Counted from the stretch's first letter, positions 26,581 to 57,776 are shown. The stretch is DNA of 64,000 bases from IMGVR_UViG_3300027759_000046:1-64000; one strand, 5' to 3'. Program-made: numbers and translations. The notes: generated from the sequence alone by a model not told the origin.

Positions 26581-26608
26581 ATTCTACTCATAAAAAAAAT
26601 TTAGTTTT
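26581..26608 (-). promoter_or_regulatory. Putative phage early/middle promoter AAAACT-N16-TAGAAT
   Basis: Same 16-nt-spaced bipartite motif as at six other intergenic sites. Faces the RuvC-like/gp55 genes. Confidence 0.6.
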
Positions 26609-26613
26609 TATTC

Positions 26614-26641
26614 AAAACCTTTTGAATGCATACTGTAAAAA
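26614..26641 (+). promoter_or_regulatory. Putative phage early/middle promoter AAAACC-N16-TAAAAA
   Basis: Motif match, back-to-back with the minus-strand copy. Faces the exonuclease-groEL genes. Confidence 0.5.
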
Positions 26642-26763
26642 AAGGGTGTTGGGAGGGTATAGTCTCTTAGGTTCTTAGTTACTTAGTCTACTTATTTTAT
26701 TAATAATAAAGATTAGAGATTCTAAGTATCTAGGCTCTTAGCAGCCAAATCTCAACACTCTTT
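26641..26763 (+). other. Long imperfect inverted repeat (rod-like hairpin; candidate structured RNA or origin element)
   Basis: 26641-26654 pairs with 26750-26763 (14 bp, 2 G-U). Inner stems: TACTTAG/CTAAGTA, CTTAG/CTAGG, TCTA/TAGA and TTTATT/AATAAA. Confidence 0.55.
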
Positions 26764-26796
26764 AGTACATTGTGATTAACTTCTAAATATAAATTC

Positions 26797-27540
26797 ATGT
26801 TCGATCAACACCAAACTGAGAAATTCCTATTTTTTGACATTGAAACTGCGGGCATTGAGGCCGATTTTTCAAACCTGTCGCCCAGACTACAAGAGCAATG
26901 GCAGCATCGCGCTGAGTTCTTAAGAAATCAACTTGCACAAAAGTATCCGGACAATGCAGGTAAAGAAACTGCTGAGCTTTTTGCTGAAAAGGCAGCATTG
27001 CAGGCTGAATTCGGTAGAATTGTTTGTATTTCATTTGGAAAAATTAAGTTTAATGAAGATCTTGAGCCAGTTGCTCAATTAGTTTCATATACTGGAACAG
27101 AAGAAGAGATCTTAACCAATTCTTTTAAATTAATAAGCGGCTTAACTAAACAAGGTGTCAAGCTAGTCGGTCACAATATTAAAAGATTCGATATTCCGTT
27201 CTTATGTAAAAGAGCTTTCATCAATCATATAGAAGTCCCAACAGCCCTTCAAGTCTGGGATCGTAAACCTTGGGAAATTCCAGTAGTCGATACTTCAGAA
27301 CTTTGGAGTTTTGGCGCATGGCAAGAAGGATTCACCTCACTTGATCTGCTTTCTGCCGTTTTAGGATTGCCTTCACCAAAAGATGAGATGAAAGGCTCAG
27401 AGGTTCATAGCGAATTTTATTCTGGCAACATCTTAGAGATTCAAAAATACTGTCAAAAAGACGTAGTTTCCTTAATAAAGATAATTCTTTCTCTTTCAAA
27501 CCTAAACCAATTGGAAGATTCGAATATAATAATCAAGTAA
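26797..27540 (+). CDS. Stand-alone DEDD 3'-5' exonuclease (PolB exonuclease-like family)
   Basis: FFDIETA (ExoI), AEFGRIVCIS, VGHNIKRFDIPFL (ExoII) and YCQKDV (ExoIII). Confidence 0.85.
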   Translation: MFDQHQTEKFLFFDIETAGIEADFSNLSPRLQEQWQHRAEFLRNQLAQKYPDNAGKETAELFAEKAALQAEFGRIVCISFGKIKFNEDLEPVAQLVSYTGTEEEILTNSFKLISGLTKQGVKLVGHNIKRFDIPFLCKRAFINHIEVPTALQVWDRKPWEIPVVDTSELWSFGAWQEGFTSLDLLSAVLGLPSPKDEMKGSEVHSEFYSGNILEIQKYCQKDVVSLIKIILSLSNLNQLEDSNIIIK

Positions 27541-32200: not shown

Positions 32201-33717
32201 TTACAATAGACACAGAAGCTGGCGTAAATGAAGTTAAAGATACTCTTAGTAAACTATTCGAAGGTATGCTAGACTATCTAAAGGGCAAACCTTCTGAACC
32301 TGATACAACTGGGCTATCTAAGGAGGAAGCTGCACGTCGAGCTAAAGCCGAAAAGGCCGTACAGGACGTAATTGCCAAAGCTCTAGCATTAACTGCCTTT
32401 GCAACCTCTGTCCCTATCCCAATCGTTACGTTTGACCTAAGTAAAAAATGTTGTAAAACCGAGCCGGTCAGTTTTCCAACAATTGATCCAGCCCTTGCTG
32501 CCGCCTTTTCAATAATACTTGCACTAGTTAACGCCGTGATTGGTGGTCTAAAGGCCGAAGATTTTATGGCCGCTCTCGGAATACCCGATATAAAACAAAA
32601 AATTAGCATACAATTAATTTTTGACATGCTAATTGCAATAATTGAATCAATTCCAGAAGTTCCACTGCCAGATCCATCAAGTATCGTTAACTTATTTAAG
32701 TCAACAATCATTCCAATGTTTACTTCAACCTCATTACCTGGTGCTCCAAACCCATTACACCCGCCAATGTTCCCAATTGTAATTCCGTTAGATCCAATTT
32801 TAAAACCTCTAATTAAAATTGCATTAGGTTTATTAATCGAAGCTATCTTAAAGCTCTTATCTAGAGCTGATGCTAATTTAAAAGCAGCGTCTGGTGCTGA
32901 TCAGAAAGGTGGGCTATATAATTCAGATCAACTACTTAATCAGGTTTTAACTGAGGCATGTGGCAATACTGGAATCTCAGCAAATCTAACATTTGATCAA
33001 GTTGGATCAAATCTAAATTCTTCAAATGTTAGTATCACAGTAACTCTGCCAAACGGTAAGAAATTTAAGTTGCCTAAAATACCAGCATTTCCAGTTGATG
33101 TAATTGCATACTTCCAATTGTTAACTGGTCCAGACATCATTGAATTAGTTAGAAGCCTGTTCAACGGCATATTTGATCAAATAATGGATCCAATTGTCCA
33201 AATCGTTAATATAGTTTCAGCCATTGCTAAATCACTAGACACTTACGAGTTTAATCTAATCGAAGCCGGTATTCCGCAAGTCACCATAATCAAGTTACTC
33301 ATAATGAAGCTTGATTCCATGATTCCAAAGGGTATCAAAACCAAAATAATTAGTCCTGAAGTAATGGCAATAATTCAAGCAGCAACCATTCCAGCTCTAA
33401 AATTTGCAGAACCGGTAGTTAAAGAAGTTGCATGGATCGGCGTTCTTGCACTATGCGCGGCCGCTTCACCAGCCACTGCATATAAAACTGTATCGATTGC
33501 GCGTATGTTTCATCCAATAGTGAATCAAGACGATCTACCACCATGGGAAAGGTTAACTCATAAGAATCCATTATTCGCGATTTTCCTTGACGAGATAGCC
33601 TGGAGAGGATCAATCTATTCAACCGGTTCACTAATATTTCAGACGAAAACTCCAGCAGTTTTACCGTACACACCAATTTTTCCGATCATCCACATTTCGC
33701 CACATACTCTCGGTTAA
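29236..33717 (+). CDS. Large hypothetical protein (1493 aa) with coiled coils and Pro-rich hydrophobic segments
   Basis: Uninterrupted ORF; no domain recognised. Confidence 0.85.
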   Translation: MATNTLFKELLKQVKCEEISSTGFSQADLDAVKACIQNVKPPDTPVSIKLPAQPSPDCVPAANEQVKKIIADEQRKLPIAIRKSILKAKVQELRDNLTPIKEYYNARYDFYTATVKKVEPSTSQYLYWEDEYNRLTNLTKSLYTILSNDSELYFSWGYTVIYVINRANEDFDNSEVRQFFKKLPDDLNSSSSISSIINTIPSNPYNDEYFATVVNNILGTLLKAPKFIEWLVASRARAYAYESREIAIGNATNSQNTQIQNIEALPSQASAQALIQNTFRKISRQLLVTFQSNTGTQNGLTVPSKTAGLTLTLIGKNGVSAKLPVIHDDGTTEQIDTIIPINGSADLIKPIFSTKTSFSTQHINQYDPESSTNPPRSDSDYTILSGLLYNGGVQYNSYIGLYNKVSNPISKLFTLEERGLTINESQIDPKLKEAKDAPTSIKQDNITLYVANQTKYEDFYTNLDKSYPVKIKEEYSNVYPAAIKSTLADLRILAQREAADQFRKVPNSFLKLARPTSYTASPGSTVFNSGTFTYSSVDSTLSQVLAYYKKANEEIDQLIKDCDDQISQLEKDIKANLMDQDIISKKILGIPCFAKTPTIPSDPNCEAAALAKLGTDPLYIHTLGGTDSSLPDFTTQCYWKKFTDALNKVSLLPFPDISGPPPANTVFRYWPINCIIPAGPALVLLPIPPKWSPLFVLPTPLGTLVCLLTMPIAPVGIPLPSVSLFYFAPDSNKYLVASTNIPLLFSDPTFTTLKFGFELDNSPTSINPLGLHPTNPYKGQMVKGSIQVPVAVSAAIAKAKRLAEIAALIAQGKIPNLPLSMIEDLLNLLNESPDSDFARQVKKFRGTVNTQLNKLGEMQTNAIEDLKNKLKDARDAALDKTFGEKDPAKRRKSRKNARDLQILELQEKIDATLNCFDPWIDNIKFGTISYPKDATKHNPQLPKAAQTVIELLELASRGDLMLKSMSLNKKLIKIINKVNIKKFIKKTEFTIDTEAGVNEVKDTLSKLFEGMLDYLKGKPSEPDTTGLSKEEAARRAKAEKAVQDVIAKALALTAFATSVPIPIVTFDLSKKCCKTEPVSFPTIDPALAAAFSIILALVNAVIGGLKAEDFMAALGIPDIKQKISIQLIFDMLIAIIESIPEVPLPDPSSIVNLFKSTIIPMFTSTSLPGAPNPLHPPMFPIVIPLDPILKPLIKIALGLLIEAILKLLSRADANLKAASGADQKGGLYNSDQLLNQVLTEACGNTGISANLTFDQVGSNLNSSNVSITVTLPNGKKFKLPKIPAFPVDVIAYFQLLTGPDIIELVRSLFNGIFDQIMDPIVQIVNIVSAIAKSLDTYEFNLIEAGIPQVTIIKLLIMKLDSMIPKGIKTKIISPEVMAIIQAATIPALKFAEPVVKEVAWIGVLALCAAASPATAYKTVSIARMFHPIVNQDDLPPWERLTHKNPLFAIFLDEIAWRGSIYSTGSLIFQTKTPAVLPYTPIFPIIHISPHTLG

Positions 33718-33732
33718 TAATCTATATTTTCT

Positions 33733-33760
33733 AAAACCTGTGGTGAAATCTCTGTATAAT
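33733..33760 (+). promoter_or_regulatory. Putative phage early/middle promoter AAAACC-N16-TATAAT
   Basis: Intergenic motif upstream of the S1-like gene. Confidence 0.65.
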
Positions 33761-33787
33761 TTATTACTTAACTTTAAAAAATAGTAA

Positions 33788-34969
33788 ATGGAAAACAACC
33801 AATTCACGACCGAAGAACTTGATGCTCTATTCAGTCAATCGACATCGAAGTACAACACTACAATCAAATTAACTGAAGCTGACCGTAGAGCTGGCGTAAA
33901 GATTTTATGTAAAGAGCCCTATGCTCAAGAATTATATGATCTCTATTCTAGATTCGAATCAGGTTCACCAATTACATCAAAAGACTTTACCGAAGGTCAA
34001 TTATGTACAGTTATCGCAAAGAGTATTGATTTTGACGGTAAGATGATTATTGCAGATGAGAAATTCTCAAAATCAACAGTTTACATTCCATTTAGAGAAT
34101 TTACAGAAGAGCCATCATTATTACTTAATGACGGAGACCTACGAGAATTTAAAGTAGTTATTACTAAAGCAACTGCTGGAGACTATGTTGGATCTGAGAA
34201 GAAATGCGCAGCGTTTACTTATCGTGAAAACTTAAATAGCTTCATGAAGGACGAAAAATGGTTCTACGTAAAAGTTGTTAGCTTAGTAAAAGGCGGATAC
34301 CTTGCTCTATATAAAGGAACCGTTAAATGTTTCTTACCTGGATCTCATGCAGCAGCCAACGTAATTAGAGACTTTAATGAGTACTTAAACACTGAAATTC
34401 CAGTTATGATTGAGAATTTTGATGCAACAAATGACCTGTTCATTGTTTCTTACAAGAAGTACATCAAACACACATTACCTCAAAAAGTATACGAATTGGA
34501 ATTCGGTAAAGAGTACAAAGGTATCTTAACCAATAAACCATACGATTTCGGTATCTTTGTTGAATTCCAAAATTACTACACAGGTTTAATCCATAAGAGC
34601 GAATTTGAAAATTATGCAGAATTTGCAGAAGGTCGTAAATCAGGCGATGAGATTTCATTCTACATCAAGGATATTATCATCAAGAAAGGAGAACCTCGTA
34701 TTGTGTTAACCGACACACTTGATAAAGTAGATTACGAAAAAATTCAATGGCAAAGTCTAAAAGATAGAGTTGAAGGTCACACCCTAAACTTTACGTTAGA
34801 CAAAGAAGACTTTTCAATTGAATTGGAGATGCCAGACGAAGATATTGTCTTCAGAACTGACGTAAGTCACCTTAAGGGCCGAATCCGAATACCTAATGAA
34901 GGCCAGGTGAAAATCCTACGAGTTGATACCTTTAGAAAAAATTTAAAATTTGATTTCTTACAAGCTTAG
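33788..34969 (+). CDS. rpsA: Ribosomal protein S1 (bS1)-like protein with about 3-4 S1/OB domains
   Basis: VKVVSLVKGGY..KCFLPGSH..IPVMIENFD..FIVSYK (D2-like) and YKGILTNKPYDFGIFVEF..YTGLIHKSEF (D3-like), plus degenerate flanking repeats. Confidence 0.8.
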   Translation: MENNQFTTEELDALFSQSTSKYNTTIKLTEADRRAGVKILCKEPYAQELYDLYSRFESGSPITSKDFTEGQLCTVIAKSIDFDGKMIIADEKFSKSTVYIPFREFTEEPSLLLNDGDLREFKVVITKATAGDYVGSEKKCAAFTYRENLNSFMKDEKWFYVKVVSLVKGGYLALYKGTVKCFLPGSHAAANVIRDFNEYLNTEIPVMIENFDATNDLFIVSYKKYIKHTLPQKVYELEFGKEYKGILTNKPYDFGIFVEFQNYYTGLIHKSEFENYAEFAEGRKSGDEISFYIKDIIIKKGEPRIVLTDTLDKVDYEKIQWQSLKDRVEGHTLNFTLDKEDFSIELEMPDEDIVFRTDVSHLKGRIRIPNEGQVKILRVDTFRKNLKFDFLQA

Positions 34970-35000
34970 TAGTTATTTGGTACTTTAATAAATAACTAAG

Positions 35001-35144
35001 ATGTATAAGTCAAACTTTAAAAACACGCAATTCGGTTCACAGGTTAGTAAATTTTACTCAAACCACTTATTAGCTAACCGCCGATCAAGCGCCAGTACTT
35101 ATACACACAATACCAGTATTAACCGTAAAATTTACTTAAACTAA
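35001..35144 (+). CDS. Possible 47-aa basic small protein ([14 protein letters not shown]...RKIYLN)
   Basis: ATG 5 nt after an exact ATAAATAA motif (34988-34995). Fills the rpsA-nrdB gap and ends 7 nt before nrdB. Below the ORF-track size cut-off. Confidence 0.4.
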
Positions 35145-35151
35145 AAAATTA

Positions 35152-36111
35152 ATGGAACCTATCCTAGTAGAGAATCCCAATCGATTCGTTGTCTTCCCAA
35201 TCCAGCATCATGACTTGTGGGAATATTATAAAAAAGCGGAAGCTAGTTTTTGGACAGCTGAGGAAATTGACCTTGCTGCCGACCTAGTCGACTGGCGAAC
35301 TAAATTAAATGATGACGAGAGACACTTTATCAAGCATGTATTAGCATTCTTTGCAGCGAGTGATGGAATAGTTAACGAGAATTTAGCTGAGAATTTTGTT
35401 AAAGAAGTTCAATACCCAGAGGCTAAATTTTTCTATGGATTCCAAATTATGATGGAAAATATCCACTCTGAGACCTACTCATTGCTTATTGATACCTATA
35501 TTGCTGATCCGGAAGAGAAAATGAAATTGTTTAGAGCAATCGATACTATTCCAGCAGTTGCTAAAAAGGCAGAGTGGGCATTACGTTGGATCAAGAATTC
35601 AACTTTCCAAGAAAGACTTGTTGCGTTTGCAGCAGTCGAAGGAATCTTCTTCTCAGGATCGTTCTGTTCTATTTTTTGGTTGAAAAAACGGGGCCTTATG
35701 CCAGGATTAAGTTTCTCAAATGAACTTATTTCAAGAGACGAAGGCTCGCATACAGATTTTGCAGTTCACCTACACAATAATCATATCAACAATAAAGTTT
35801 CTCCAGAGAGAATCAAAGAGATCTTATTATCTGCTCTAGAAATTGAAAAAGAATTTATCATTGATGCATTACCAGTCAAAGTAATCGGTATGAATTCTGA
35901 CTTAATGTCTCAATACTTAGAGTTTGTAACAGATCGACTATTACAAGATTTAGGTTGTGAAAAGGTCTTCAATGTGCAAAATCCGTTTGATTTTATGGTA
36001 AACATCGCGTTAAATGGAAAAACTAATTTCTTCGAGAAGAGAGTTGGCGAATATCAGAAAGCGGGAGTAAAATCCGGAGATACAGGTTTTTCAATGGATG
36101 CAGATTTTTAA
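35152..36111 (+). CDS. nrdB: Ribonucleotide reductase class Ia beta subunit
   Basis: [50 protein letters not shown] and FFEKRVGEY. Confidence 0.97.
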
Positions 36112-36135
36112 CAATAAAAAACAAGGATTTAAGAA

Positions 36136-38544: not shown

Positions 38545-38574
38545 CCCTGGACTCAAATTTATTAAACCAAGTAC

Positions 38575-38601
38575 AAGGGAGGATTTTATCCTCCCTTTTT
38601 T
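38575..38601 (+). terminator. Rho-independent terminator after nrdA
   Basis: Perfect stem AAGGGAGGAT/ATCCTCCCTT followed by a T tract. Confidence 0.8.
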
Positions 38602-38602
38602 A

Positions 38603-38610: not shown

Positions 38611-38634
38611 CCCTAGTAAAAAAGCTATAAACTC

Positions 38635-39916: not shown

Positions 39917-39944
39917 AAAACCGGGTGAGACTCGGTAATATAAG
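39917..39944 (+). promoter_or_regulatory. Putative phage early/middle promoter AAAACC-N16-TATAAG
   Basis: Intergenic motif upstream of the Hc1-like gene. Confidence 0.6.
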
Positions 39945-40181: not shown

Positions 40182-40214
40182 AAGGGCAAAGTTTTTAAAA
40201 CTTTGCCCTTTTTT
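40182..40214 (+). terminator. Rho-independent terminator
   Basis: 14-bp inverted repeat AAGGGCAAAGTTTT/AAAACTTTGCCCTT plus a T tract. Confidence 0.8.
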
Positions 40215-40217
40215 ATT

Positions 40218-40245
40218 GAAACTCCACCAACTTTTTTAGTACAAT
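40218..40245 (+). promoter_or_regulatory. Putative phage early/middle promoter GAAACT-N16-TACAAT
   Basis: Motif directly after the terminator and upstream of the gp32-like gene. Confidence 0.65.
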
Positions 40246-47058: not shown

Positions 47059-47070
47059 TTATTTATTTAT
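47059..47070 (-). promoter_or_regulatory. Overlapping late promoter motifs ATAAATAAATAA
   Basis: Upstream of the sheath ATG at 47033. A further copy lies at 47123-47130. Confidence 0.65.
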
Positions 47071-47201
47071 CAATCTATTCCCAAAATTGAGCTATTTTAA
47101 GTCTAGTTTGCTATTGCTAGAGTTATTTATCAGCAACCAAGGTGCTAAACTTAAACCCTTTTTCATTTATCGAATAAAAGAAACTATAAAACTGTACAAA
47201 T

Positions 47202-47669: not shown

Positions 47670-47686
47670 TTTAGTATAATAATTTC

Positions 47687-49437: not shown

Positions 49438-49447
49438 GAAAATTATT

Positions 49448-50092
49448 ATGGGATACGATATTGATGCACTAATGGCTGTAAAAGACAGCTTTCAGAACCA
49501 AAACTTTCAATGGGTTAAAACTAAAGACCGTTCTAAATTAGGAAAGGTCGTTAAAGTAACCGACATTGCTCCAGGTAGAAATGGATACGTTGCTCAGTTG
49601 TCAGACGGTTCAACCATTCCAACTGACCGTCTAACTAGCGATCTATTAATGCTAATGGACGAACAACCTGCCTTATCAATGGAAGAGATCATGTCAATAA
49701 ATTACGTACCGGGACTATCAGACGCTGAAATTCAAGTAGCAGATACTATTCCAGCAGATTTTAAGCAGGAAATCTTGTCTCAGCCAAAGCCTCAAGTTCA
49801 AATAGAACAAGCTTCACCTCAAGTTCAGGTCAGGACACCGAATTCTGAACCTGGTGATCTGTTTGGCATGTTTTCGCTAGAAGAGACTGACCTAAGCCTA
49901 ATTGTATCAGTCAAGTTGCCGGCTAAGAACTTGCTAAAGATGATGTATTCAAATTCACAAGATCAGGAACAATTCTTAAATAGGTTGGCCGGCTATATAA
50001 ATAATAGTGTAACACCTGATTCAATTAAAGACTCATTAAGAAAGTCATTGGGTCAAGATAAAAAGAAGAAAATGGATGCAACTTCAGCCTAA
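49448..50092 (+). CDS. Hypothetical protein
   Basis: ATG 49448 preferred (the track uses GTG 49412). No polymerase motifs. Confidence 0.75.
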   Translation: MGYDIDALMAVKDSFQNQNFQWVKTKDRSKLGKVVKVTDIAPGRNGYVAQLSDGSTIPTDRLTSDLLMLMDEQPALSMEEIMSINYVPGLSDAEIQVADTIPADFKQEILSQPKPQVQIEQASPQVQVRTPNSEPGDLFGMFSLEETDLSLIVSVKLPAKNLLKMMYSNSQDQEQFLNRLAGYINNSVTPDSIKDSLRKSLGQDKKKKMDATSA

Positions 50093-50663
50093 CAAAATAA
50101 ACAAAAGCACTTCCCAAATTTTAGGTGGGGCATTTGATGTAGTTTCTTTGACTCGAGACACCGATAAAGCGGATCGTCTTATGTGCAAGGTAAACTACAT
50201 TGCTGTTTTACCTTTTGAGAGAACAGCAGACGATCGTATTAAAGCAATTTACGGTCTAAAATTTGAAAATCATGCAACTGGCCAATCTGATACTAGTTTA
50301 TTAGTTGACACGGTTGATCCATCCAAAGACCAAACTCCATTCGACACAGTTTGTCGTGCTCTACTTGAAGAGGCTGGAGTAAATATTGAAGAGCTTGGAG
50401 TAGACGAGAACGATATTTACTATTTAGGTAATATTTCAACCTCAATTCCAGTTAATTCTAAGTTTAAGTGTTATGCAGTTGACTTAACTAAAGCTGCAAA
50501 CCCAGAATCACCAATCGAGTTCGCTCGAACCCTTTCCAAATCAAAATTCGACAAAGATTCTTCTGAAATTGTTAAACTTGGGTTTCACCAAGTTGTAAAT
50601 GGCGATTTTACTGATTCAACTATCCTAGCCGGCTCATTTTTATTAGTTTCATACTTTAATTGA
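50076..50663 (+). CDS. Degenerate Nudix-fold protein
   Basis: IAVLPF..DQTPFDTVCRALLEEAGV..YYLG resembles a Nudix box, with substitutions at the conserved G, E and RE positions. Confidence 0.6.
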   Translation: MQLQPNKINKSTSQILGGAFDVVSLTRDTDKADRLMCKVNYIAVLPFERTADDRIKAIYGLKFENHATGQSDTSLLVDTVDPSKDQTPFDTVCRALLEEAGVNIEELGVDENDIYYLGNISTSIPVNSKFKCYAVDLTKAANPESPIEFARTLSKSKFDKDSSEIVKLGFHQVVNGDFTDSTILAGSFLLVSYFN

Positions 50664-50689
50664 AACTAGAGTGAATCTCAGTGTACAAG
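50662..50689 (+). promoter_or_regulatory. Putative phage early/middle promoter GAAACT-N16-TACAAG
   Basis: Intergenic motif upstream of uvsX. Confidence 0.65.
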
Positions 50690-50715: not shown

Positions 50716-51909
50716 ATGGCAAAAACTACAATGGACGCTTTCGCAAAGTTTAACGACTTGCTAGAGAAAAAGGTAAAATCTAAAATTGAAATCCGTGGAT
50801 TCTCCGATATCGAAGAGTACATCCCAACCGGAAACTACTTATTAAATGCACAAATGTCTGGCTCAGTATTTGGCGGATATCCAAACACTAGAAGTATTGG
50901 AATCGCTGGAGACTCTGGCGCTGGTAAAACATTCCTCTGCCTGAATGCAGTTCGCGAATTACAGAAGAAAGATTACATGGTTATCTACATTGATACCGAA
51001 GGTGCAATCGATTCGACTGATTACGTAAAATTTGGAGTAGATCTTACTAAACTAAAGTACTTACGCATGGGTCTAATTAGCGAAGTTAAATTCTACGTTA
51101 ATGACCTAATTGACACAATCAAAGAGAACCCAGGCCTTAAAATTGCTCTATTCGTTGACTCAGTCGGAATGTTAGACACAGATAAGAGTAAACGTGACAT
51201 GGATGCAGGTAAAAATGCGGCAGATATGGGTCTTCGTGCAAAAGAGATGAGATCGTTATTTAAGTCTCTAACTCTAGACCTTTCAAATTACAAAATCCCA
51301 TTCATCTTTACAAACCACACCTATGCCTCTATGGATCAATACACTCCAAAGGGAATGTCTGGAGGTGGAGGTCCTGAGTTCTCAGCTTCAATTATCTTGA
51401 TGTTGAGTAAAGGAACTCTTCGTGATGAGGCTAAGACCACAACCGGAATCATTGTTAGATCCAAGACAAAAAAGAATCGTCTTGCTAAACCAATCGATAT
51501 TGAATTCCATATCTCATTCCATAAGGGTATGAATCCGTTCGTTGGTCTTGAACAATACGTAAATTGGGAAAATTGCGGAGTAGGTCGCGGCAATAAGTTG
51601 ACAGAAAAAGAATTTTCAAAACTTAAACCAGACGAAGCTGACCTATGTTCAAAATTTGAACTTGGCGGTGAAACTTTCTACTTTTTACCTAAGAAATTAG
51701 GAAAAACATATATTGTCAGACATAACGGTGATGCAGTTCCAGTTAAGGAATTCTTTTCAAATAGACTTTTCACAAATGAAGTTTTAACAGAACTCGATGA
51801 GAAGGTTATTAAGCCAACGTTTAAATTCCCTGAAACTCAGGATGGAATTGATACAATGGAAATTGATGAATTAGAAGACTTAACTCCAACTGAAGAGCAT
51901 GACCTTTAA
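50716..51909 (+). CDS. uvsX: RecA-like recombinase UvsX
   Basis: IPTGNYLLN, Walker A GDSGAGKT, YIDTEGA, LFVDSVG, FTNHTY and SGGGG..FSASII. Confidence 0.93.
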   Translation: MAKTTMDAFAKFNDLLEKKVKSKIEIRGFSDIEEYIPTGNYLLNAQMSGSVFGGYPNTRSIGIAGDSGAGKTFLCLNAVRELQKKDYMVIYIDTEGAIDSTDYVKFGVDLTKLKYLRMGLISEVKFYVNDLIDTIKENPGLKIALFVDSVGMLDTDKSKRDMDAGKNAADMGLRAKEMRSLFKSLTLDLSNYKIPFIFTNHTYASMDQYTPKGMSGGGGPEFSASIILMLSKGTLRDEAKTTTGIIVRSKTKKNRLAKPIDIEFHISFHKGMNPFVGLEQYVNWENCGVGRGNKLTEKEFSKLKPDEADLCSKFELGGETFYFLPKKLGKTYIVRHNGDAVPVKEFFSNRLFTNEVLTELDEKVIKPTFKFPETQDGIDTMEIDELEDLTPTEEHDL

Positions 51910-52237
51910 GATACAAACAGGGCTACCGATTAAATACTCGCTAGCCCTTCATTCAGCTTTACCGAGCTACCCCAATTCATCTGACTTTTTATTTGACGTT
52001 GCCTCCCATATTATTAGAGTAACTGAACTAAAGTCTAAAGAGTGGGATTCAGCCGATATTAAATTCTCAACCAAAACTTTAAAATATGTTTTTGGCGAGC
52101 ACATGGCATCCGAGCAGTTTAAGGATAAGATTAGAAATATCTTAAAGGATCTCATTGCTAGTGGAACGCTAACCAAAAAAGGCGAATTTATTTTTATACC
52201 CGAAACGGAATTTTCTAAGTACTATATAATAGCATAA
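51899..52237 (+). CDS. Hypothetical protein, possible winged-helix fold
   Basis: 112-aa ORF coupled to uvsX; C-terminal helix-beta pattern (LKDLIASGTLTKKGEFIFI). Confidence 0.65.
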   Translation: MTFKIQTGLPIKYSLALHSALPSYPNSSDFLFDVASHIIRVTELKSKEWDSADIKFSTKTLKYVFGEHMASEQFKDKIRNILKDLIASGTLTKKGEFIFIPETEFSKYYIIA

Positions 52238-52257: not shown

Positions 52258-53802
52258 ATGATGATTGATTTTAAAGAAAATATTGAATTATTAGAAAAGA
52301 TAATTTTCAATTTTATTTTAACCGAAGAAGATAATGAAGTAGTAATCAAGCCCAAGAATTACGATTCATTGGACATGAGAGAGATCATTCCAATGGTTAA
52401 ACCACATTACTTCAACGATGACAATCTTCAGAGATTATATCGTGAAGCCAAAAAGTTCTTTCTAGAATACAAGAAGATTCCAACTCGAAATGAATTAAAG
52501 CAATTAGCTAATCTTTCAAACATGGATTTGCCCGATGCAAAATTCAATAGCTATTTTGAAGTTGATCTCGGCAGCTATAATTACGATTTTCTATTTAAGT
52601 ACACAAAGGCCTTTATTTTCTACAAGAATCTTAATGAGTCTGTTATTGATGTCTTATCGTTTATCAAAACGACTGACGTAAATCCAGAAAACGTGGAGAT
52701 CATTACCAATCAGGTTAGAGAAAAGTTTAATGAAAAGCTTAATGTATCTTTTACGAGTGCTGAGTCTGGCCTAAACTTCTTTAATGCAGTGGATCACGTT
52801 CAGCTGAGTAAAATCGGTAATCCAACTGGATTCAAATTCTTTGATAAAACGCTAGGCGGCGGTTGGAATCCAAAAACACTTGTTGTTTTCCAAGGTCGAC
52901 CTAAAGTCGGTAAGTCGATGGTGCTTTCTAATATTGCAGGTCGAGCATTTATATCTGGCTGTAATGTTGGTATTGCAACTCTTGAATTATCTGATCGTAA
53001 GTACATGAAACGACTAGGATCCATGATCTTAGATATTCCATTTAAGGATTATGATTCAATGTTAAATCCTGGCCAAGTTTCAGCAGTGGATGCTCGAATG
53101 AAAAACTTAAAAGAGACGGTGTCTACTCTTGGCGAATTGCAAGTAAAAGAATTTCCAACTGGAACAGCTACCGCAATTGACGTTGAAAACTATTTCTTAA
53201 AGGTTCAGCAAAATACTGGCAAGAAGTTCACCGTAATTGTTGTCGATTATATTAACTTAATGAGACCTATGCGAGAGCAAGGAAATACTTATGAAAAGAT
53301 CAAAGTAATCTCAGAAGAGTTAAGAGCAGTTGCTATTCGAAATGAATGGTGTATTATTACCGCAACTCAAATCAAAAGAGACGCAGTAGACGATCAAGAC
53401 TTAAGTATGTCAGATATCGCTGAATCGTTCGGTTTGGTACACACAGTAGATTCTCTATTCGGCCTAATGAGAGGCCCGATGGAGAAACGTATGAAGATTA
53501 AATTGATTGCAAACCGAGATGGTGGATACAACGAAAGTTTTAAAATGTATAGAATGAGTTATGAATTTGCTAAATTAGTTGAAGAAACTGATCCAGCTTC
53601 AGAATTCTATTCAGATGACGATGATACTCAATCATTGGAGAATCAAATGCGAAACCAGTATCAAACTGCCGCAACCACAACACTACCTCCAAATTTGATA
53701 CCGTACGATTTAGCAATAAGCCCAGACTATCAGCCTAAGCATGCAAGTCCGGAGCCACCTAAATCCTCTAATTACGACGATATCTTAAATATGATTAACT
53801 AA
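52258..53802 (+). CDS. gp41: Replicative DnaB-like helicase (T4 gp41-like)
   Basis: LDKTLGGG-type segment, Walker A GRPKVGKS, ATLELS, VKEFPTG, IVVDYINLM, TATQIKR and IAESFGLVHTVD. Confidence 0.93.
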   Translation: MMIDFKENIELLEKIIFNFILTEEDNEVVIKPKNYDSLDMREIIPMVKPHYFNDDNLQRLYREAKKFFLEYKKIPTRNELKQLANLSNMDLPDAKFNSYFEVDLGSYNYDFLFKYTKAFIFYKNLNESVIDVLSFIKTTDVNPENVEIITNQVREKFNEKLNVSFTSAESGLNFFNAVDHVQLSKIGNPTGFKFFDKTLGGGWNPKTLVVFQGRPKVGKSMVLSNIAGRAFISGCNVGIATLELSDRKYMKRLGSMILDIPFKDYDSMLNPGQVSAVDARMKNLKETVSTLGELQVKEFPTGTATAIDVENYFLKVQQNTGKKFTVIVVDYINLMRPMREQGNTYEKIKVISEELRAVAIRNEWCIITATQIKRDAVDDQDLSMSDIAESFGLVHTVDSLFGLMRGPMEKRMKIKLIANRDGGYNESFKMYRMSYEFAKLVEETDPASEFYSDDDDTQSLENQMRNQYQTAATTTLPPNLIPYDLAISPDYQPKHASPEPPKSSNYDDILNMIN

Positions 53803-54474: not shown

Positions 54475-55590
54475 ATGAAACTATCAAATATTAGAAAAAT
54501 TAACCTAGTTGGAGATCTTCACCTAGGTATCAGAAATAACTCAGTTGAATGGTTAGAGATCCAAAAAGATTTTCTAACCGACTTTTTATTTAAGACGATT
54601 GACCAAGATTTTGATGAAGACCGAGATATTCTAATATTGGAAGGCGACATATTTCATTCAAGAGAATCAATTAACGTCAGAATCCAAAATGAAGCATTCG
54701 ATATCTTTAAGAAACTTTCAGCAAAGTTTAAAAGAGGAGTCTACATCATTATCGGAAACCACGACGTTTATTACAAAGACAAAAATGAAGTTCACTCGCT
54801 AAAGTCGTTAAACTACTTAGCTGAGAATATTCACGTATTCGAAACTCCAGAAATTCTAACAATTAATGGATCCCATAACTTCTTAATGTTACCTTGGATC
54901 GAAGACGTTTCGAGACTTTCAAATGTTGTAAACGATCACCGTAATATTTGCCAGTACATTGTATGTCATGCAGATATCAAAGGTCTAAAATTTAATAAGT
55001 GGACTCATGTTGAGCACGGTATTGAAATTGATGCACTTGATACCTATAAGAGAGTTTACGGCGGTCATATCCACCACAGACAAGAGAGCCGTAACGTTCT
55101 CTATACCGGAACTCCTTATCAAATGGATCGAGGTGACATGGGTAATGCCAAAGGATTCTATCAGCTAACGGTTGATACTCCTGAATTAAAAGAAGTGTTT
55201 GTTGAAAATACACAGTCTCCAACCTTTGTTAAGTTCGATATCATGAATGTTTTGGAATTAACGCATGCTGAAATTGAGGAAAGGTTCAGAAATAATTTTG
55301 TAGACTTAATGATCAATGTTAATTTTGCAAATAGGTTCTCAGTAACTCGTTTTCTTGAAGAGATCTCAGCAGTACCTCACCGTAAAATTGAATTTTTTAC
55401 TTACGTTGATCAGACTCAAGCTGATGCTGAAATGAATTCCGAATTTAATCCAGAAGAGGGCTTTAATATAACTGATATTTTTAAAATGTATGTAAAGTCA
55501 AGAGACTACTCACAAGACTTTAAATCTGACTTAGCTAGAAAATTCATTGAAATACATCAAGCCGTAAAAGAAGACAATACTTATGCCTAA
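54475..55590 (+). CDS. gp47: Recombination nuclease, Mre11/SbcD-like (T4 gp47)
   Basis: Metallophosphoesterase motifs GDLHLG, GDIFH, GNHD and GHIH, plus YTGTPYQ. Confidence 0.92.
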   Translation: MKLSNIRKINLVGDLHLGIRNNSVEWLEIQKDFLTDFLFKTIDQDFDEDRDILILEGDIFHSRESINVRIQNEAFDIFKKLSAKFKRGVYIIIGNHDVYYKDKNEVHSLKSLNYLAENIHVFETPEILTINGSHNFLMLPWIEDVSRLSNVVNDHRNICQYIVCHADIKGLKFNKWTHVEHGIEIDALDTYKRVYGGHIHHRQESRNVLYTGTPYQMDRGDMGNAKGFYQLTVDTPELKEVFVENTQSPTFVKFDIMNVLELTHAEIEERFRNNFVDLMINVNFANRFSVTRFLEEISAVPHRKIEFFTYVDQTQADAEMNSEFNPEEGFNITDIFKMYVKSRDYSQDFKSDLARKFIEIHQAVKEDNTYA

Positions 55591-56071
55591 TCCATCAATT
55601 AGTAAATACGTTCGAATTATTGAAATGAATCGGGAATTTAAAGCGATTGCTGCAATGGATGTTCCGGAAAACACAATAATTGAAATTTGCCCAGTTCTAA
55701 TTAGTAGCGCTAAAGCAATCATGTCATTAACTAATTCAGATTCTAAACTTGCAAGCAAAATCATAATTGACGAGGCTGCCATTGACAGGGAATATCAAGT
55801 GTTTGCTGAGCTTGGTGAAATGGAATTGGAAAGAAGGCTTGATTCAGGCCAAATTACACCAGCTGAGTATACTCAAATACTAAGATCTAAGGTCAACATA
55901 AACTCTCTACTAAATGCTAAAACTCACGGTCTGCCATTAGGAAACGGATTAATTTATGGAATAAGTGATTTTCCAAATATGGTCAGAGAATATCATTCAA
56001 GTAGTAAACTTTGCGTGTTTAGATCAGTACAATACATAATAGAAGGCAGTGAACTAACTTACTCCAAATAA
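55583..56071 (+). CDS. Degenerate SET-domain-like protein
   Basis: KAIAAMDVPENTIIEICPVL...LPLGNGLIYGISDFPN...VFRSVQYIIEGSELTY follows the bacterial SET pattern (VFA.RDI..GEIIE.CPV...LALGYGSLYNHS..PN...F.A.RDI..GEEIT.NY), but NHS is replaced by GIS. Confidence 0.55.
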   Translation: MPNPSISKYVRIIEMNREFKAIAAMDVPENTIIEICPVLISSAKAIMSLTNSDSKLASKIIIDEAAIDREYQVFAELGEMELERRLDSGQITPAEYTQILRSKVNINSLLNAKTHGLPLGNGLIYGISDFPNMVREYHSSSKLCVFRSVQYIIEGSELTYSK

Positions 56072-56077
56072 TATTAA

Positions 56078-57751
56078 ATGAAGATAACTCAATTCTCTTT
56101 TAAGAACATTTGTTCTTATGGCAATAAATTACAGACTTTTAAATTCTCAGAAGATCCTCAATTAGTATTGGTTCAGGGTAAGAATGGCAGCGGTAAATCT
56201 TCAATTTCCGATGCTCTAACTGTTGCACTATATGGCAAATCATCAATTCGTAAAACAAAAGAGATTCCAAATCGAATCAATAAAAATGCATACACGCATG
56301 TAGAGTTTTTAACCGGATCCGGCGATACGATTGAAATTGAAAGAGGCCTAGAGCCTAACTTTTCAAAATTATTAATCAATGGAACTGAGCATAATTTGCC
56401 AGATAAACGCCGAGTAGACGATTTTATCGAAGAAGAACTTACAAAGATCCCATTCAACGTATTCTCAAACACAATCAGTCTATCAGTTAATGATTTCAAG
56501 AGCTTTGTTAAGTTAAGCCCTCATGACAAGCGCCAAATTATTGATAAAATCTTTGGTTTAGATATTGTAAATGACATGTCTAAAATTGCCAAGGAAGAAG
56601 TTCGTGAATTAAAAGTATCAATACAAACAATTGACTCAACTGTTCTTAATAATGAAGCTCTGCTCCAAAATTCACAAGATCAGCTAACGAATCTTAAGCA
56701 AGATCTATCGTCGGCTAAAGATTCTAGGATTTTAGAGTTAACAACCGAAATTTCTGAGCTAAATAAAACTAAAGAGATTTATAAAGCCGAATACACAGGC
56801 TTTCAAGCCGAGTTAAAGAAATTAGAATCAGCAGTAACAGACGCTAGAGAAAAGAAGTCAAATATTCAATTAACTATTTCTGAAATTCAGAAAAAACTTG
56901 ACCTGTACTCCAAGAATAAGTGTCCACACTGTCTATCTGATCTTACTGACGCTGCACATTTAGGCATAAAGGATAAGCTAGTTGCTAAGAAACAGGAGCA
57001 AACTGACCTGATTCCAACTGCTAACTCTCAAATTACTGAAGCGAATCAATTACTTGAAGATCTAAAGGCTGCTCAAAGTTCTGCTCGAGATAAATTTTAT
57101 CAAGTGGATGGAGTTCTTGCTCCGCTAAAGAAAGAACTTTCTGAACTAAATGATACACCTGAGTCGACTGATAAGAAGTCTGGCACAACATACATAAATG
57201 GAGTAATTTCAAATATTGAATCTGAGATTTCAAAATTATCAGAAGAAAGAGCTAAATTAAGTTCACAATTATCAATTTCTCAAGAGATGGAAGACATTCT
57301 ATCAGATAATGGAATGAAGCGTGTTCTAATGAGTCAAATTATTCCAATGCTAAATAAGAAAATCTTGAAGACTTCAAAGCTTCTTGAATTTAAGTTTGCA
57401 TTTGAATTTGATTTAGAATTTAATCCAATAATTACTCACTTAGGAATGCAAATTTCTCCAGACTCGTTATCTGCTGGAGAACAAAAGAAGATGAACTTAA
57501 TCGTTCTATTGTGTATTTTGGAGCTCTTAAAATTAAAACATCACAAGGTTAATCTATTATTCCTAGATGAAGTATTCTCATCATTAGATGTTGAATCAAT
57601 CTATAGAGTAGTTGACCTATTGAAAACTTTTGCAAAAAAGTACAACATGACAGTATTCGTAATCTCTCATGATCCTTTACCTGAGGAGTTTTTCGACACA
57701 AAGTTAATGGTTGAAAACACCGACCACTTCTCAGACATCAAGTTCTTGTAA
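56078..57751 (+). CDS. gp46: Recombination ATPase, Rad50/SbcC-like (T4 gp46)
   Basis: GKNGSGKS, coiled coil with CPHC zinc hook, LSAGEQKK signature, LFLDE and ISH. Confidence 0.93.
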   Translation: MKITQFSFKNICSYGNKLQTFKFSEDPQLVLVQGKNGSGKSSISDALTVALYGKSSIRKTKEIPNRINKNAYTHVEFLTGSGDTIEIERGLEPNFSKLLINGTEHNLPDKRRVDDFIEEELTKIPFNVFSNTISLSVNDFKSFVKLSPHDKRQIIDKIFGLDIVNDMSKIAKEEVRELKVSIQTIDSTVLNNEALLQNSQDQLTNLKQDLSSAKDSRILELTTEISELNKTKEIYKAEYTGFQAELKKLESAVTDAREKKSNIQLTISEIQKKLDLYSKNKCPHCLSDLTDAAHLGIKDKLVAKKQEQTDLIPTANSQITEANQLLEDLKAAQSSARDKFYQVDGVLAPLKKELSELNDTPESTDKKSGTTYINGVISNIESEISKLSEERAKLSSQLSISQEMEDILSDNGMKRVLMSQIIPMLNKKILKTSKLLEFKFAFEFDLEFNPIITHLGMQISPDSLSAGEQKKMNLIVLLCILELLKLKHHKVNLLFLDEVFSSLDVESIYRVVDLLKTFAKKYNMTVFVISHDPLPEEFFDTKLMVENTDHFSDIKFL

Positions 57752-57776
57752 ACTATTCACGTTTTTTTAGTATATT
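57749..57776 (+). promoter_or_regulatory. Putative phage early/middle promoter TAAACT-N16-TATATT
   Basis: Motif spans the gp46 stop and the short intergenic region before the gp42-like gene. Confidence 0.55.

What the first reader, a model, noticed from the sequence alone, without database searches (positions are those of the whole stretch)
26581..57776. Phage-specific bipartite promoter AAAC(C/T)-N16-TAnAA(T/G) in front of replication and takeover genes
Seen: seven copies at gene boundaries, all with exactly 16-nt spacing: 26608-26581 (minus, AAAACT/TAGAAT), 26614 (AAAACC/TAAAAA), 33733 (AAAACC/TATAAT), 39917 (AAAACC/TATAAG), 40218 (GAAACT/TACAAT), 50662 (GAAACT/TACAAG) and 57749 (TAAACT/TATATT). 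Six have G immediately before the -10. Weaker candidates occur near 47153 and 52202. Established: this is not the E. coli TTGACA -35, the Bacteroidota TTTG/TAnnTTTG promoter, the T4 early GTTTAC, or the MotA box. Inference: a phage-encoded sigma factor or activator defines an early/middle regulon (gp55, groEL, S1, Hc1, gp32, uvsX, gp42).
Basis: partly seen in the sequence, partly recalled or inferred. Interest (0 to 1): 0.68.

Follow-up and report, generated by a model that had tools for sequence, protein, structure and literature searches.

The report
Conserved middle-gene promoter of a jumbo phage
The two-box motif AAAC(C/T)-N16-(G)TAnAAT is a real, evolutionarily conserved promoter in front of the replication, recombination and chaperone genes of an uncultured 253-kb lake phage, most likely read by a sigma factor the phage encodes itself; which of its sigmas does so is unresolved.

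Summary
The strict pattern occurs 8 times in the window against 1.8 expected. It occurs 23 times in the whole 253-kb phage genome, and 16 of those lie 5-45 nt upstream of a same-strand start codon (P about 1e-20). Only spacings of 16, and less so 17, are enriched.

The boxes are invariant and the spacer is free in 27 distinct relatives' gp32 upstream regions. Orthologous genes in two diverged relatives keep the motif. A very distant 636-kb phage (LR756504) has about 60 copies in front of the same kinds of genes.

Lake metatranscriptome contigs begin at the Hc1 promoter, although contigs locate a start only roughly.

The phage encodes no RNA polymerase and no MotA/AsiA, but it has three sigma factors:
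- an RpoD-like one behind host-type (Bacteroidota-like) early promoters;
- an ECF-like one behind the large-terminase (terL) gene;
- a gp55-like one that is itself downstream of this motif.

The motif is therefore best read as the middle tier of an early, middle, late cascade, with late promoters of the form ATAAATAA. Which sigma reads it is not settled: roughly 0.5 for the RpoD-like sigma and 0.3 for the ECF-like one.

It is a new variant of a known kind of system.

The parts
26581..26608 (-). Promoter of the RuvC-like / gp55-like-sigma operon. The -35 is AAAACT at 26608-26603 and the -10 is TAGAAT at 26586-26581. The start codon lies 24 nt downstream.
   Evidence: It scores 23.5 bits on the matrix. 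Spacing 16 is conserved in G001.
26614..26641 (+). Divergent partner promoter. The -35 is AAAACC at 26614-26619 and the -10 is TAAAAA at 26636-26641. It is followed by a conserved G-rich block and a leader of about 150 nt before the exonuclease gene at 26797-27540.
   Evidence: The relatives have AAACC-N16-TAGAAT (G001) and AAACC-N16-TAAAAT (G002) at the homologous place.
27504..27530 (+). Promoter of the GroEL-like gene, AAACC-N16-TATAAT. It lies inside the 3' end of the exonuclease ORF, 25 nt before the ATG at 27555.
   Evidence: It is conserved in G001 and reads TATAAC in G002.
33733..33760 (+). Promoter of the S1-domain protein gene (33788-34969).
   Evidence: Spacing 16 is conserved in G001 and G002. 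The ortholog in LR756504 also has the motif.
39917..39944 (+). Promoter of the Hc1 histone-like gene (39966-40157). The -10 is TATAAG at 39939-39944.
   Evidence: Metatranscriptome contigs show zero depth over 39343-39933 and depth of about 10 from about 39934-39970 onward. A relative's contig starts at about 39933.
40182..40210 (+). Intrinsic terminator after Hc1: 13 pairs followed by a T run. It sits immediately upstream of the gp32 promoter.
   Evidence: Relatives show compensatory stem changes.
40218..40245 (+). Promoter of the gp32-like ssDNA-binding protein gene (40278-41321), GAAACT-N16-TACAAT.
   Evidence: In 27 distinct relatives the positions A,A,C and G,T,A.,A,A never vary, while spacer entropy is 1.4-1.9 bits. 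The same motif lies before gp32 in LR756504.
47153..47180 (+). Promoter before gene 47202-47669 (weak dUTPase_2 match, below Pfam's cut-off), AAACC-N17-TAAAAG.
   Evidence: G001 has spacing 16 here.
50662..50689 (+). Promoter of the RecA/UvsX gene (50716-51909), GAAACT-N16-TACAAG.
   Evidence: G001 has spacing 17. In G002 the -35 has degenerated.
56006..56033 (+). Spacing-17 site, AAACT-N17-TACAAT, 45 nt before the Rad50/SbcC-like gene (56078-57751).
   Evidence: It is conserved in G001. The ortholog in LR756504 has the motif.
57749..57776 (+). Weak site, TAAACT-N16-TATATT, with the ATG of the thymidylate-synthase-family gene only 7 nt downstream.
   Evidence: It scores 16.2 bits on the matrix. 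It is not conserved in G001 or G002.
18382..18408 (-). Strict match inside the end of the upstream ORF, 15 nt before the 1211-aa gene 14732-18367.
   Evidence: G001 has spacing 17 and G002 has no site. It scores low on the matrix (14.2 bits).
52202..52230 (+). Doubtful candidate, GAAACG-N17-TATAAT, before the DnaB-like helicase gene (52258-53802).
   Evidence: It is not conserved in the relatives.
25444..25887 (-). Gene for the gp55-like late sigma (147 aa, region 2 only). It is the second gene of the operon driven by the promoter at 26581-26608.
   Evidence: Sigma70_r2 scores 28.2 bits. phrog_234 'late sigma transcription factor' matches at 2.3e-17.
25889..26557 (-). RuvC-like resolvase gene, the first gene of that operon.
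   Evidence: phrog_159 matches at 1.4e-8.

Best explanation
The motif is a sigma-70-family two-box promoter. The -35 element is (T/G)AAAC(T/C) and the -10 element is (A)GTAnAAT(A). They lie 16 nt apart, sometimes 17, and transcription is predicted to start about 7 nt after the -10. This leaves an A-rich leader of 13-26 nt without a Shine-Dalgarno sequence.

The promoter heads the middle tier of the phage's programme: DNA replication, recombination and nucleotide-metabolism genes, chaperones, and the gene for the late sigma.

Proposed mechanism (inferred):
1. Host RNA polymerase with host sigma-A transcribes a cluster of early genes from Bacteroidota-like promoters. That cluster includes a 239-aa phage sigma (genome 182275-182994, outside the window).
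2. A phage sigma then redirects the host core enzyme to about 30 AAAC/TAnAAT promoters.
3. One of these promoters expresses the gp55-like sigma.
4. That sigma in turn reads the roughly 55 ATAAATAA late promoters in front of structural genes.

My preferred reader of the motif is the early-expressed 239-aa sigma. Its region 2 is close to that of primary sigmas, which fits a TAnAAT -10. Its region-4 recognition helix is different, which fits a non-TTGACA -35.

What is shown and what is inferred:
- Shown: the motif's position, spacing and conservation; the gene contents; the sigma genes; and which promoter type precedes which gene.
- Inferred: the timing, the start sites, and which sigma binds.
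For: The motif is a promoter:
- Enrichment, orientation and distance to start codons.
- An unbiased dyad search recovers it.
- Footprint before gp32 in 27 distinct relatives: invariant boxes, free spacer, constant length in 23 of 27 and one nt longer in 4.
- Orthologs keep the motif. G000-G001: 14 of 18, Fisher P = 5e-15. G000-G002: 5 of 16, P = 3e-4.
- The same spacing peak occurs in G001, G002 and the distant LR756504.
- RNA contigs from a lake metatranscriptome start at the Hc1 promoter after 590 nt of zero depth.

A phage sigma acting on the host core enzyme:
- Three sigma genes are present and conserved in the relatives.
- No T7-like or multisubunit RNA polymerase, MotA or AsiA gene was found.
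- The -10 is unlike the host-type TAnnTTTG (PMC6847099).

The cascade:
- The 239-aa sigma gene is preceded by the host-like early promoter in all three genomes.
- The gp55-like gene lies behind the AAAC promoter.
- ATAAATAA precedes the tail sheath, head protease and baseplate wedge genes.

The 239-aa sigma specifically:
- Its region 1.2-2.4 aligns with SigA at E = 7e-33. Most of the region 2.3-2.4 segment (KFITYAQFWIR against KFSTYATWWIR) is kept.
- Its region-4 helix reads TPVEVNR where SigA has TRERIRQ.
Against: - No read-level transcription start data exist. Contigs only bracket a start, and the gp32 contig begins inside the upstream terminator.
- LR756504 has the same motif before orthologous genes, yet it has no homolog of the 239-aa sigma. 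It has only three ECF-like sigmas and a gp55-like one.
- Lak-B5 carries a homolog of the 239-aa sigma and shows no enrichment of the motif; LR756500 also carries homologs, with a doubtful excess under one of the two patterns.
- AAC in the -35, a 16-17 nt spacer and GT at the start of the -10 are the usual hallmarks of ECF-sigma promoters. This rests on my own knowledge, not a tool result.
- The invariant G just before the -10 is not typical of primary-sigma promoters.
Confidence: 0.5

Rival explanations
1. The promoter reading is the same, but the cognate factor is the phage's 208-aa ECF-type sigma (genome 241171-241797). Its region 4 would read the AAC of the -35 and its region 2 the GTA of the -10.
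For: - The protein is ECF-type: TIGR02985 matches at 1e-18.
- Its region-4 helix reads NTVKTKIRKAR. From my own knowledge this matches the usual ECF pattern.
- AAC, a 16-17 nt spacer and GT are typical of ECF promoters (own knowledge).
- It is conserved in G001, G002 and G005.
- Its best homolog is present in LR756504, which has the motif but lacks the RpoD-like sigma.
Against: - In all three genomes the gene sits behind baseplate-wedge, terL and PhoH genes, in an operon headed by a late ATAAATAA promoter.
- It would therefore depend on the gp55-like sigma, which itself depends on this motif. That is circular unless the protein is packaged or there is an internal promoter.
- The -10 is 7-8 nt long and TATAAT-like, longer than usual for ECF sigmas.
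- LR756502 and LR745206 have homologs at 27-28% identity but no motif enrichment.
- No copy of the motif lies directly before its own gene, whereas ECF genes are usually self-regulated.
Confidence: 0.3
2. Sigma appropriation, as at T4 middle promoters. The host sigma-A would read the -10, while a phage activator bound at the AAAC box replaces the -35 contact.
For: - The regulon (gp32, UvsX, nucleotide metabolism) resembles that of T4 middle genes.
- The upstream box is phage-specific.
- Many small early genes of unknown function could encode such factors.
Against: - No MotA or AsiA homolog was found.
- The -10 (TAnAAT) differs from both the Bacteroidota -7 element TAnnTTTG and the phage's own host-type early promoters, TATATTTAC. 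Host sigma-A would therefore not be expected to read it.
- The box lies 16 nt from the -10, as a -35 does, not at about -30.
Confidence: 0.07
3. The motif is read by a host alternative sigma, for example a host ECF sigma, that the phage exploits.
For: Bacteroidota encode many ECF sigmas, and the -35 looks ECF-like (own knowledge).
Against: - Host ECF sigmas are normally held inactive by anti-sigmas.
- The phage carries three sigmas of its own.
- The motif travels with the phage lineage, including a phage of 26% GC that presumably has a different host.
Confidence: 0.05
4. The motif is not a promoter. The conserved boxes would be a chance composition effect, or an RNA- or DNA-level element with another role.
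For: The genome is AT-rich, and A-rich sequences are common before start codons.
Against: - The sharp peak at spacing 16-17, the strand and distance bias, the free spacer between invariant boxes, and recurrence in four genomes all argue against chance.
- RNA contigs begin at one of the sites.
Confidence: 0.03

Closest known systems
Phage sigma cascades: Bacillus phage SPO1 (gp28 for middle, gp33/34 for late) and phiEco32 gp36
   Same: A host sigma reads the early genes. An early phage-encoded sigma-70-family protein then redirects the host core enzyme to a phage-specific two-box promoter, and a further phage sigma drives the late genes. The SPO1 scheme is summarised in PMC13401047.
   Different: The box sequences are different. 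The host here appears to be a Bacteroidota member, whose own promoters follow another grammar. Three sigmas of three different types are present, and the pairing of sigma with promoter has not been demonstrated.
T4 middle promoters (MotA box plus sigma-70 -10, with AsiA)
   Same: A phage-specific upstream element in front of gp32-, UvsX- and nucleotide-metabolism-type genes. It sits between an early tier and a gp55-dependent late tier.
   Different: There are no MotA or AsiA genes. The box sequence and its distance from the -10 differ. The -10 is not the host type.
T4 and T4-like cyanophage late promoters (TATAAATA / NATAAATA, read by gp55)
   Same: This genome has that class too: ATAAATAA lies about 20-25 nt before structural genes, and a gp55-like sigma is encoded.
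   Different: That is a separate class from the finding. It has no -35 box and drives a different set of genes. The finding's motif lies upstream of the gp55-like gene rather than being read by gp55.
ECF sigma promoters (AAC in the -35, 16-17 nt spacer, CGT/GTC in the -10; for example B. subtilis sigma-W, TGAAAC-N16-CGTA)
   Same: The -35 core AAC, the spacer length and a G-T at the start of the -10 are shared. An ECF-type sigma is encoded by the phage.
   Different: The -10 continues as a TATAAT-like hexamer. The ECF gene is not preceded by the motif and sits in a late operon. The consensus sequences quoted are from my own knowledge.
Bacteroidota housekeeping promoters (-33 TTTG / -7 TAnnTTTG)
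   Same: The phage's early-gene cluster uses a close match, TATATTTA(C/G), with an AT-rich upstream block. This supports a Bacteroidota host, as does the absence of Shine-Dalgarno sequences (PMC6847099).
   Different: The finding's motif does not match this consensus in either box.
'Moraphages', a lineage of large aquatic phages (PMC12619734)
   Same: The paper describes the same kind of genome: Hc1-like histone, DnaJ and other chaperones, a shared sigma factor, predicted Flavobacteriia hosts, and a sister relationship to Lak phages. The nearest named relatives of this phage's gp32 and UvsX are Lak phages, at 33-38% identity.
   Different: Its one use of the word 'promoter' concerns another subject, so it appears to hold no promoter analysis (term search only). 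Membership of this genome in that lineage was not tested by phylogeny here.

Membership tests
Sigma-70-family two-box promoter | Two conserved boxes at a fixed distance of 16-18 nt | tested here: met
   There is a sharp peak at spacing 16, and a lesser one at 17, in four genomes. Boxes are invariant and the spacer is free in 27 relatives.
Sigma-70-family two-box promoter | Located upstream of genes, on the sense strand, at a consistent distance | tested here: met
   16 of 23 strict matches lie 5-45 nt before a same-strand start, P = 8e-21.
Sigma-70-family two-box promoter | Transcripts start about 6-8 nt after the -10 | tested here: inconclusive
   Metatranscriptome contigs begin between 39933 and about 39970, and the -10 ends at 39944. 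Contigs cannot fix a 5' end, and the gp32 contig starts in the upstream terminator.
Sigma-70-family two-box promoter | Initiation depends on a specific sigma factor | not testable with these tools
   Three candidate sigma genes are present. A co-occurrence test across 7 other phage genomes was inconclusive.
T4 MotA-dependent middle promoter | MotA box (a/t)(a/t)TGCTT(t/c)A centred near -30 | tested here: not met
   The consensus upstream box is taAAAC(t/c), 16 nt from the -10.
T4 MotA-dependent middle promoter | MotA and AsiA genes in the genome | tested here: not met
   PF09114 and PF09010 give no match at E of 1 or below. Very divergent analogs cannot be excluded.
T4-type late promoter (gp55) | A single TATAAATA-like -10 box without a -35, before late genes | tested here: not met
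   The finding has a required -35 box and a different -10. The ATAAATAA class is separate and precedes structural genes.
ECF sigma promoter | AAC motif in the -35 and a spacer of 16-17 nt | tested here: met
   In the matrix, C of AAAC is the most informative position at 1.98 bits. Spacing is 16-17.
ECF sigma promoter | A short CGT/GTC-type -10 | tested here: inconclusive
   G-T-A is invariant, but it is followed by conserved nAAT, giving a TATAAT-like element.
ECF sigma promoter | The sigma gene is preceded by its own promoter (autoregulation) | tested here: not met
   No motif lies before the ECF-like gene. It lies inside an operon headed by a late promoter in all three genomes.
Bacteroidota housekeeping promoter | A -7 element TAnnTTTG, with TTTG near -33 | tested here: not met
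   The -10 is TAnAAT. The TAnnTTT-type element is found instead in the early cluster at genome positions 178-186 kb. The consensus is taken from PMC6847099.
E. coli-type sigma-70 promoter | TTGACA-N17-TATAAT | tested here: not met
   The -10 resembles TATAAT but the -35 does not match. Sites of this type number 47 against 53.8 expected.

The most novel reading that the evidence does not exclude
A clade of very large, probably Bacteroidota-infecting phages shares one middle-promoter grammar. The clade would include this 253-kb lake lineage and the 636-kb LR756504.

The grammar is a hybrid: an ECF-like AAC -35 joined to a TATAAT-like -10. The host's own sigma cannot read it. A phage sigma gives the Bacteroidota core enzyme this new specificity.

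The full programme would have four tiers: host-type early promoters; AAAC/TAnAAT middle promoters; a TAGTATAATA subclass producing leaderless mRNAs and the phage tRNA and tmRNA transcripts; and gp55-type late promoters. Three phage sigmas would be involved.
Probability: 0.4. Interest if true: 0.7.

Novelty: new variant of a known kind. Interest (0 to 1): 0.55.

Why it matters
My literature searches turned up no account of how phages of Bacteroidota time their genes. Host promoters in that phylum follow a different grammar from the textbook one.

This finding gives a concrete, testable map for an uncultured but widespread lake phage lineage: about 30 middle promoters, about 55 late promoters, a cluster of host-type early promoters and three candidate sigma factors. 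It also shows that the middle-promoter grammar is shared with a very distant 636-kb phage.

The map would help in three ways:
- annotating transcription units in large-phage metagenomes;
- predicting the temporal class of the many genes of unknown function;
- providing orthogonal sigma/promoter pairs for genetic tools in Flavobacteriia and Bacteroides.

Conceptually it remains a phage sigma cascade, which is a well-known strategy.

Tried and rejected
- **Rfam scan of the window:** no family reached its threshold.
- **Consensus scan for TTGACA/TATAAT promoters:** not enriched, 47 against 53.8.
- **Pfam searches of the genome:**
  - MotA and AsiA: none found.
  - Multisubunit RNA polymerase domains: none found, and the controls rang.
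  - T7-type RNA polymerase: none found, but the control rang nowhere, so this is uninformative.
- **Assigning the sigma by co-occurrence across seven other large phages:**
  - With the G-anchored pattern the motif is enriched only in LR756504: 25 against 7 in the control. With the TATAAT pattern it is 37 against 13.
  - LR756500 shows a doubtful excess, 14 against 4.
  - Homologs of either sigma occur both with and without the motif.
  - The one informative case is LR756504, which has the motif without the RpoD-like sigma.
- **Searching for a separate ECF-type motif** (dyads with CGT or GTC): none emerged.
- **A long-range stem in the 26641-26763 leader**: the pairing is not evident in G001, so I dropped it as a conserved RNA structure.
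- **A spacing-17 match inside the ECF sigma gene,** conserved in three genomes: it overlaps the codons of the region-4 helix, so I judged it coding conservation rather than a promoter.
- **Metatranscriptome evidence:** only assembled contigs were available, so no 5' ends could be called. I laid reads on 5,901 bases, within the operators' 6,000-letter limit.
- **Restrictions:** No alternative genetic code and no spliced model was used.

Full report
**What the window is**

The 64-kb window is the first quarter of a single-contig viral record of 253,137 bp at 39% GC. The record is from IMG/VR and is estimated 94% complete.

Its replication module is T4-like:
- gp32 and a 5'-3' exonuclease;
- family-B DNA polymerase and a DnaB-like helicase;
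- Mre11/Rad50-like proteins and RecA/UvsX;
- ribonucleotide reductase and a thymidylate-synthase-family enzyme;
- GroEL, an S1-domain protein and an Hc1 histone-like protein.

No cultured close relative exists. The nearest named matches of gp32 and UvsX are Prevotella Lak phages and metagenomic 'huge phages', at 27-38% identity.

The gene content fits the recently described 'moraphages' (PMC12619734). These are large aquatic phages with predicted Flavobacteriia hosts, Hc1, DnaJ and a shared sigma factor. Its one use of the word 'promoter' concerns another subject (term search).

Start codons here are preceded by A-rich leaders without Shine-Dalgarno sequences. That is the Bacteroidota habit (PMC6847099).

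- The strict pattern AAACY-N16-TANAAK occurs 8 times in the window against 1.84 expected. None of 100 shuffles reached 8.
- Genome-wide there are 23 matches. Sixteen lie 5-45 nt upstream of a same-strand start codon, where 0.6 would be expected (P = 8e-21).
- The spacer was varied from 10 to 24 nt. Spacing 16 gives 23 matches with 16 near starts. Spacing 17 gives 19 with 7, and spacing 18 gives 11 with 4. The other spacings give 1-13 matches with 0-2 near starts.
- An unbiased search of all 4-mer dyads upstream of genes ranks AAAC-N15-AGTA second in this genome and third in relative G001.
- The refined consensus is taAAAC(t/c)-N9-tt-N3-aGTAnAATA. A matrix built from it finds 30 sites at 16 bits or more, against 1.0 in shuffled genomes.
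- All seven listed sites are present. Six are convincing.
- The site at 57749 is weak: its -10 is TATATT, the ATG follows 7 nt later, and it is not conserved.
- The site at 26614 has a poor -10 in this genome, but the relatives have TAGAAT and TAAAAT there.

**Conservation**

Seventy IMG/VR loci encode a gp32 that is 62-96% identical. I aligned their 27 distinct upstream regions. The alignment shows:
- a terminator hairpin with compensatory changes;
- then A, A, (A), C, which never or hardly ever vary;
- then eight spacer positions with entropy of 1.4-1.9 bits and a T-rich stretch;
- then G, T, A, n, A, A, T, in which five positions never vary;
- no length change in 23 of the 27, and one extra base in the other four.

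I fetched two whole relatives, G001 (270 kb) and G002 (217 kb). Their median protein identity to this genome is 61% and 48%. Both show the same spacing-16 peak.

Orthologous genes keep the motif far more often than chance. For G001 it is 14 of 18 (Fisher P = 5e-15). For G002 it is 5 of 16 (P = 3e-4).

Unexpectedly, the 636-kb, 26%-GC phage LR756504 has AAACT-N16-TATAAT before its gp32, although that gp32 is only 27% identical.
- Genome-wide it has 64 spacing-16 matches with 34 near starts, and 62 spacing-17 matches with 26 near starts.
- Other spacings give 28-46 matches with 0-3 near starts.
- The sites lie before its orthologs of the S1 protein, gp32, Rad50, Mre11, DNA polymerase, helicase and RNR-beta.
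- A match also abuts its gp55-like gene, but its -10 ends only 2 nt before the ATG, so it cannot serve that gene.

Lak-B5, LR756502, LR745206, LR756501 and Tenacibaculum phage pT24 show no enrichment.

**RNA evidence**

A lake-water metatranscriptome holds 64% of the sampled words of 33600-41400.
- Its assembled contigs are 100% identical to the window.
- They give zero depth over 39343-39933, then depth of about 10 from roughly 39934-39970 onward.
- A relative's contig from another run begins at about 39933.
- The Hc1 promoter's -10 box is at 39939-39944.

This is what a start at that promoter would look like. However, contigs cannot fix a 5' end, and the gp32 contig begins inside the upstream terminator. 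The evidence is therefore supportive, not decisive.

**Other promoter classes put the motif in context**

K-mer enrichment and inspection of all upstream regions show three further classes.

1. *ATAAATAA.* It precedes about 55 genes and ends about 20-25 nt before the start. The genes include tail sheath, head maturation protease and baseplate wedge. It is conserved before orthologs (30 of 36 in G001, P = 8e-23). This is the T4 and cyanophage late type.
2. *A long conserved block ending in TATATTTAC.* It occurs in 5-12 clustered copies: genome 178-186 kb here, and homologous clusters in G001 and G002. It closely matches the Bacteroidota -7 element TAnnTTTG and precedes small genes of unknown function. 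I take this to be the host-sigma early class.
3. *TAGTATAATA.* It is often placed right after a terminator.
   - The ATG follows only 7-10 nt later, which predicts leaderless mRNAs.
   - It precedes ClpP, DNA ligase, topoisomerase subunit A, exonuclease and UvdE genes.
   - It also precedes the 18-tRNA cluster and the tmRNA gene.

**Who reads the motif**

The genome has three sigma-family genes and no detectable RNA polymerase, MotA or AsiA gene.

*The 239-aa sigma (genome 182275-182994).*
- It resembles RpoD/RpoS/SigA strongly over regions 1.2-2.4 (E = 1e-35 and 7e-33).
- Most of the region 2.3-2.4 segment is retained (KFITYAQFWIR against KFSTYATWWIR).
- Its region-4 helix is TPVEVNR where SigA has TRERIRQ.
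- Its gene follows the host-type early promoter in all three genomes.

*The 208-aa sigma (genome 241171-241797).*
- It is ECF-type.
- In all three genomes it lies behind the baseplate-wedge, terL and PhoH genes, in an operon headed by a late promoter.

*The 147-aa sigma (window 25444-25887, minus strand).*
- It is gp55-like (phrog_234, 2e-17).

The simplest cascade is this. Host sigma drives the early genes, which include the 239-aa sigma. That sigma drives the AAAC/TAnAAT genes, which include the gp55-like sigma. The gp55-like sigma drives the ATAAATAA late genes.

Against this assignment:
- LR756504 has the motif but no homolog of the 239-aa sigma. It has only three ECF-like sigmas and a gp55-like one.
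- The features AAC, a 16-17 nt spacer and GT are, from general knowledge, ECF hallmarks.
- Co-occurrence across seven other phages did not settle the matter.

I therefore put about 0.8 on 'promoter read by a phage-encoded sigma'. Within that, I put about 0.5 on the 239-aa sigma and 0.3 on the ECF-like one.

**Comparison with known systems and novelty**

Functionally this is a phage sigma cascade of the SPO1 or phiEco32 kind, with a T4-like late tier. It is not a MotA-type, T4-late, E. coli-type or Bacteroidota-type promoter; each was tested and failed on a defining feature.

The new elements are:
- the box sequences themselves;
- their use in a phage lineage whose host promoters follow another grammar;
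- the sharing of the motif with a very distant 636-kb phage.

I rate it a new variant of a known kind, of moderate interest. The mechanism is plausible but unproven. The key open point, which sigma reads the motif, is directly testable.

Noticed in passing
Window about 5363-5369(+), 21798-21804(-), 25420-25426(-), 38603-38609(+), 47060-47070(-), and upstream of 60777(-) and 62604(-); about 55 genes genome-wide: A second promoter class, ATAAATAA(c), ends about 20-25 nt before the start codons of structural genes (tail sheath 44001-47033, head protease, baseplate wedge). It is conserved before orthologs in G001 and G002. It looks like the T4 and cyanophage late promoter read by gp55.
   Followed up: partly
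Window 47674-47680(+); genome G000 127064, 133699, 140587, 151328, 171575, 194032, 213992, 216226, 216915, 219137 (all minus strand); also 137964(-) and 247517(+): TAGTATAATA sites have the ATG only 7-10 nt after the -10, which predicts leaderless mRNAs for ClpP, DNA ligase, topoisomerase A, exonuclease and UvdE. Many sit directly after a terminator hairpin. The same box precedes the 18-tRNA cluster and the tmRNA gene (247539-247907). F. johnsoniae transcripts are reported to be mostly leadered (PMC6847099).
   Followed up: partly
Genome G000 178-186 kb (outside the window); G001 234-243 kb; G002 0.3-9.4 kb: There is a cluster of 5-12 near-identical long promoters: an AT-rich block, then GTCAA, then TATATTTAC. 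They precede small genes of unknown function and the 239-aa sigma gene. The -7 box matches the Bacteroidota consensus TAnnTTTG in 7 of 8 positions. These are probably host-sigma early promoters, and they are a clue to the host.
   Followed up: partly
Window 26642-26796: The plus-strand promoter at 26614 is followed by a block, GGGTGTTGGGAGGGTATAG, conserved in G001 and partly in G002. Several CTTAG repeats follow in a stretch of about 150 nt before the exonuclease gene. A second, -35-less box tttAGTAyATT lies 25-30 nt before that gene's ATG in all three genomes. This could be a leader, a small RNA or a protein-binding region. There is no Rfam match, and the long stem seen here is not evident in G001.
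   Followed up: partly
Genome G000 241171-241797(-), outside the window: An ECF-type sigma gene lies directly behind the terL, a 99-aa ORF and PhoH, and is followed by a 168-aa ORF with no family match. The operon is headed by a late promoter, and the arrangement is the same in G001 and G002. A sigma made late is odd. It may be packaged into virions, or the 168-aa ORF may be its anti-sigma.
   Followed up: no
LR756504.1 (loci L140-L171): This 636-kb phage has its own late-type box, tttTAATATATA, before about 110 genes, including the tail-sheath ortholog. Many of these have the ATG only 4-5 nt after the box. One of its ECF-like sigma genes (456029-456634) is preceded by AAACT-N17-TATAAG, which may indicate self-regulation.
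   Followed up: partly
Window 1-100: The contig begins with head-to-tail copies of a 24-nt unit, TGTCGTAGGAGCTGCAGTGGTGGT, inside an open frame that runs off the end. This is either a repetitive protein or an assembly edge.
   Followed up: no
Window 48046-50663: The family-B DNA polymerase ORF is only 463 aa, covering the exonuclease domain and the start of the polymerase domain. Two short ORFs of 226 and 195 aa follow it. The polymerase may be split, interrupted or frameshifted.
   Followed up: no
G001 241416-241829(-): Relative G001 carries a second, partial paralog of the 239-aa sigma, 35% identical over 139 aa. This genome lacks it.
   Followed up: no
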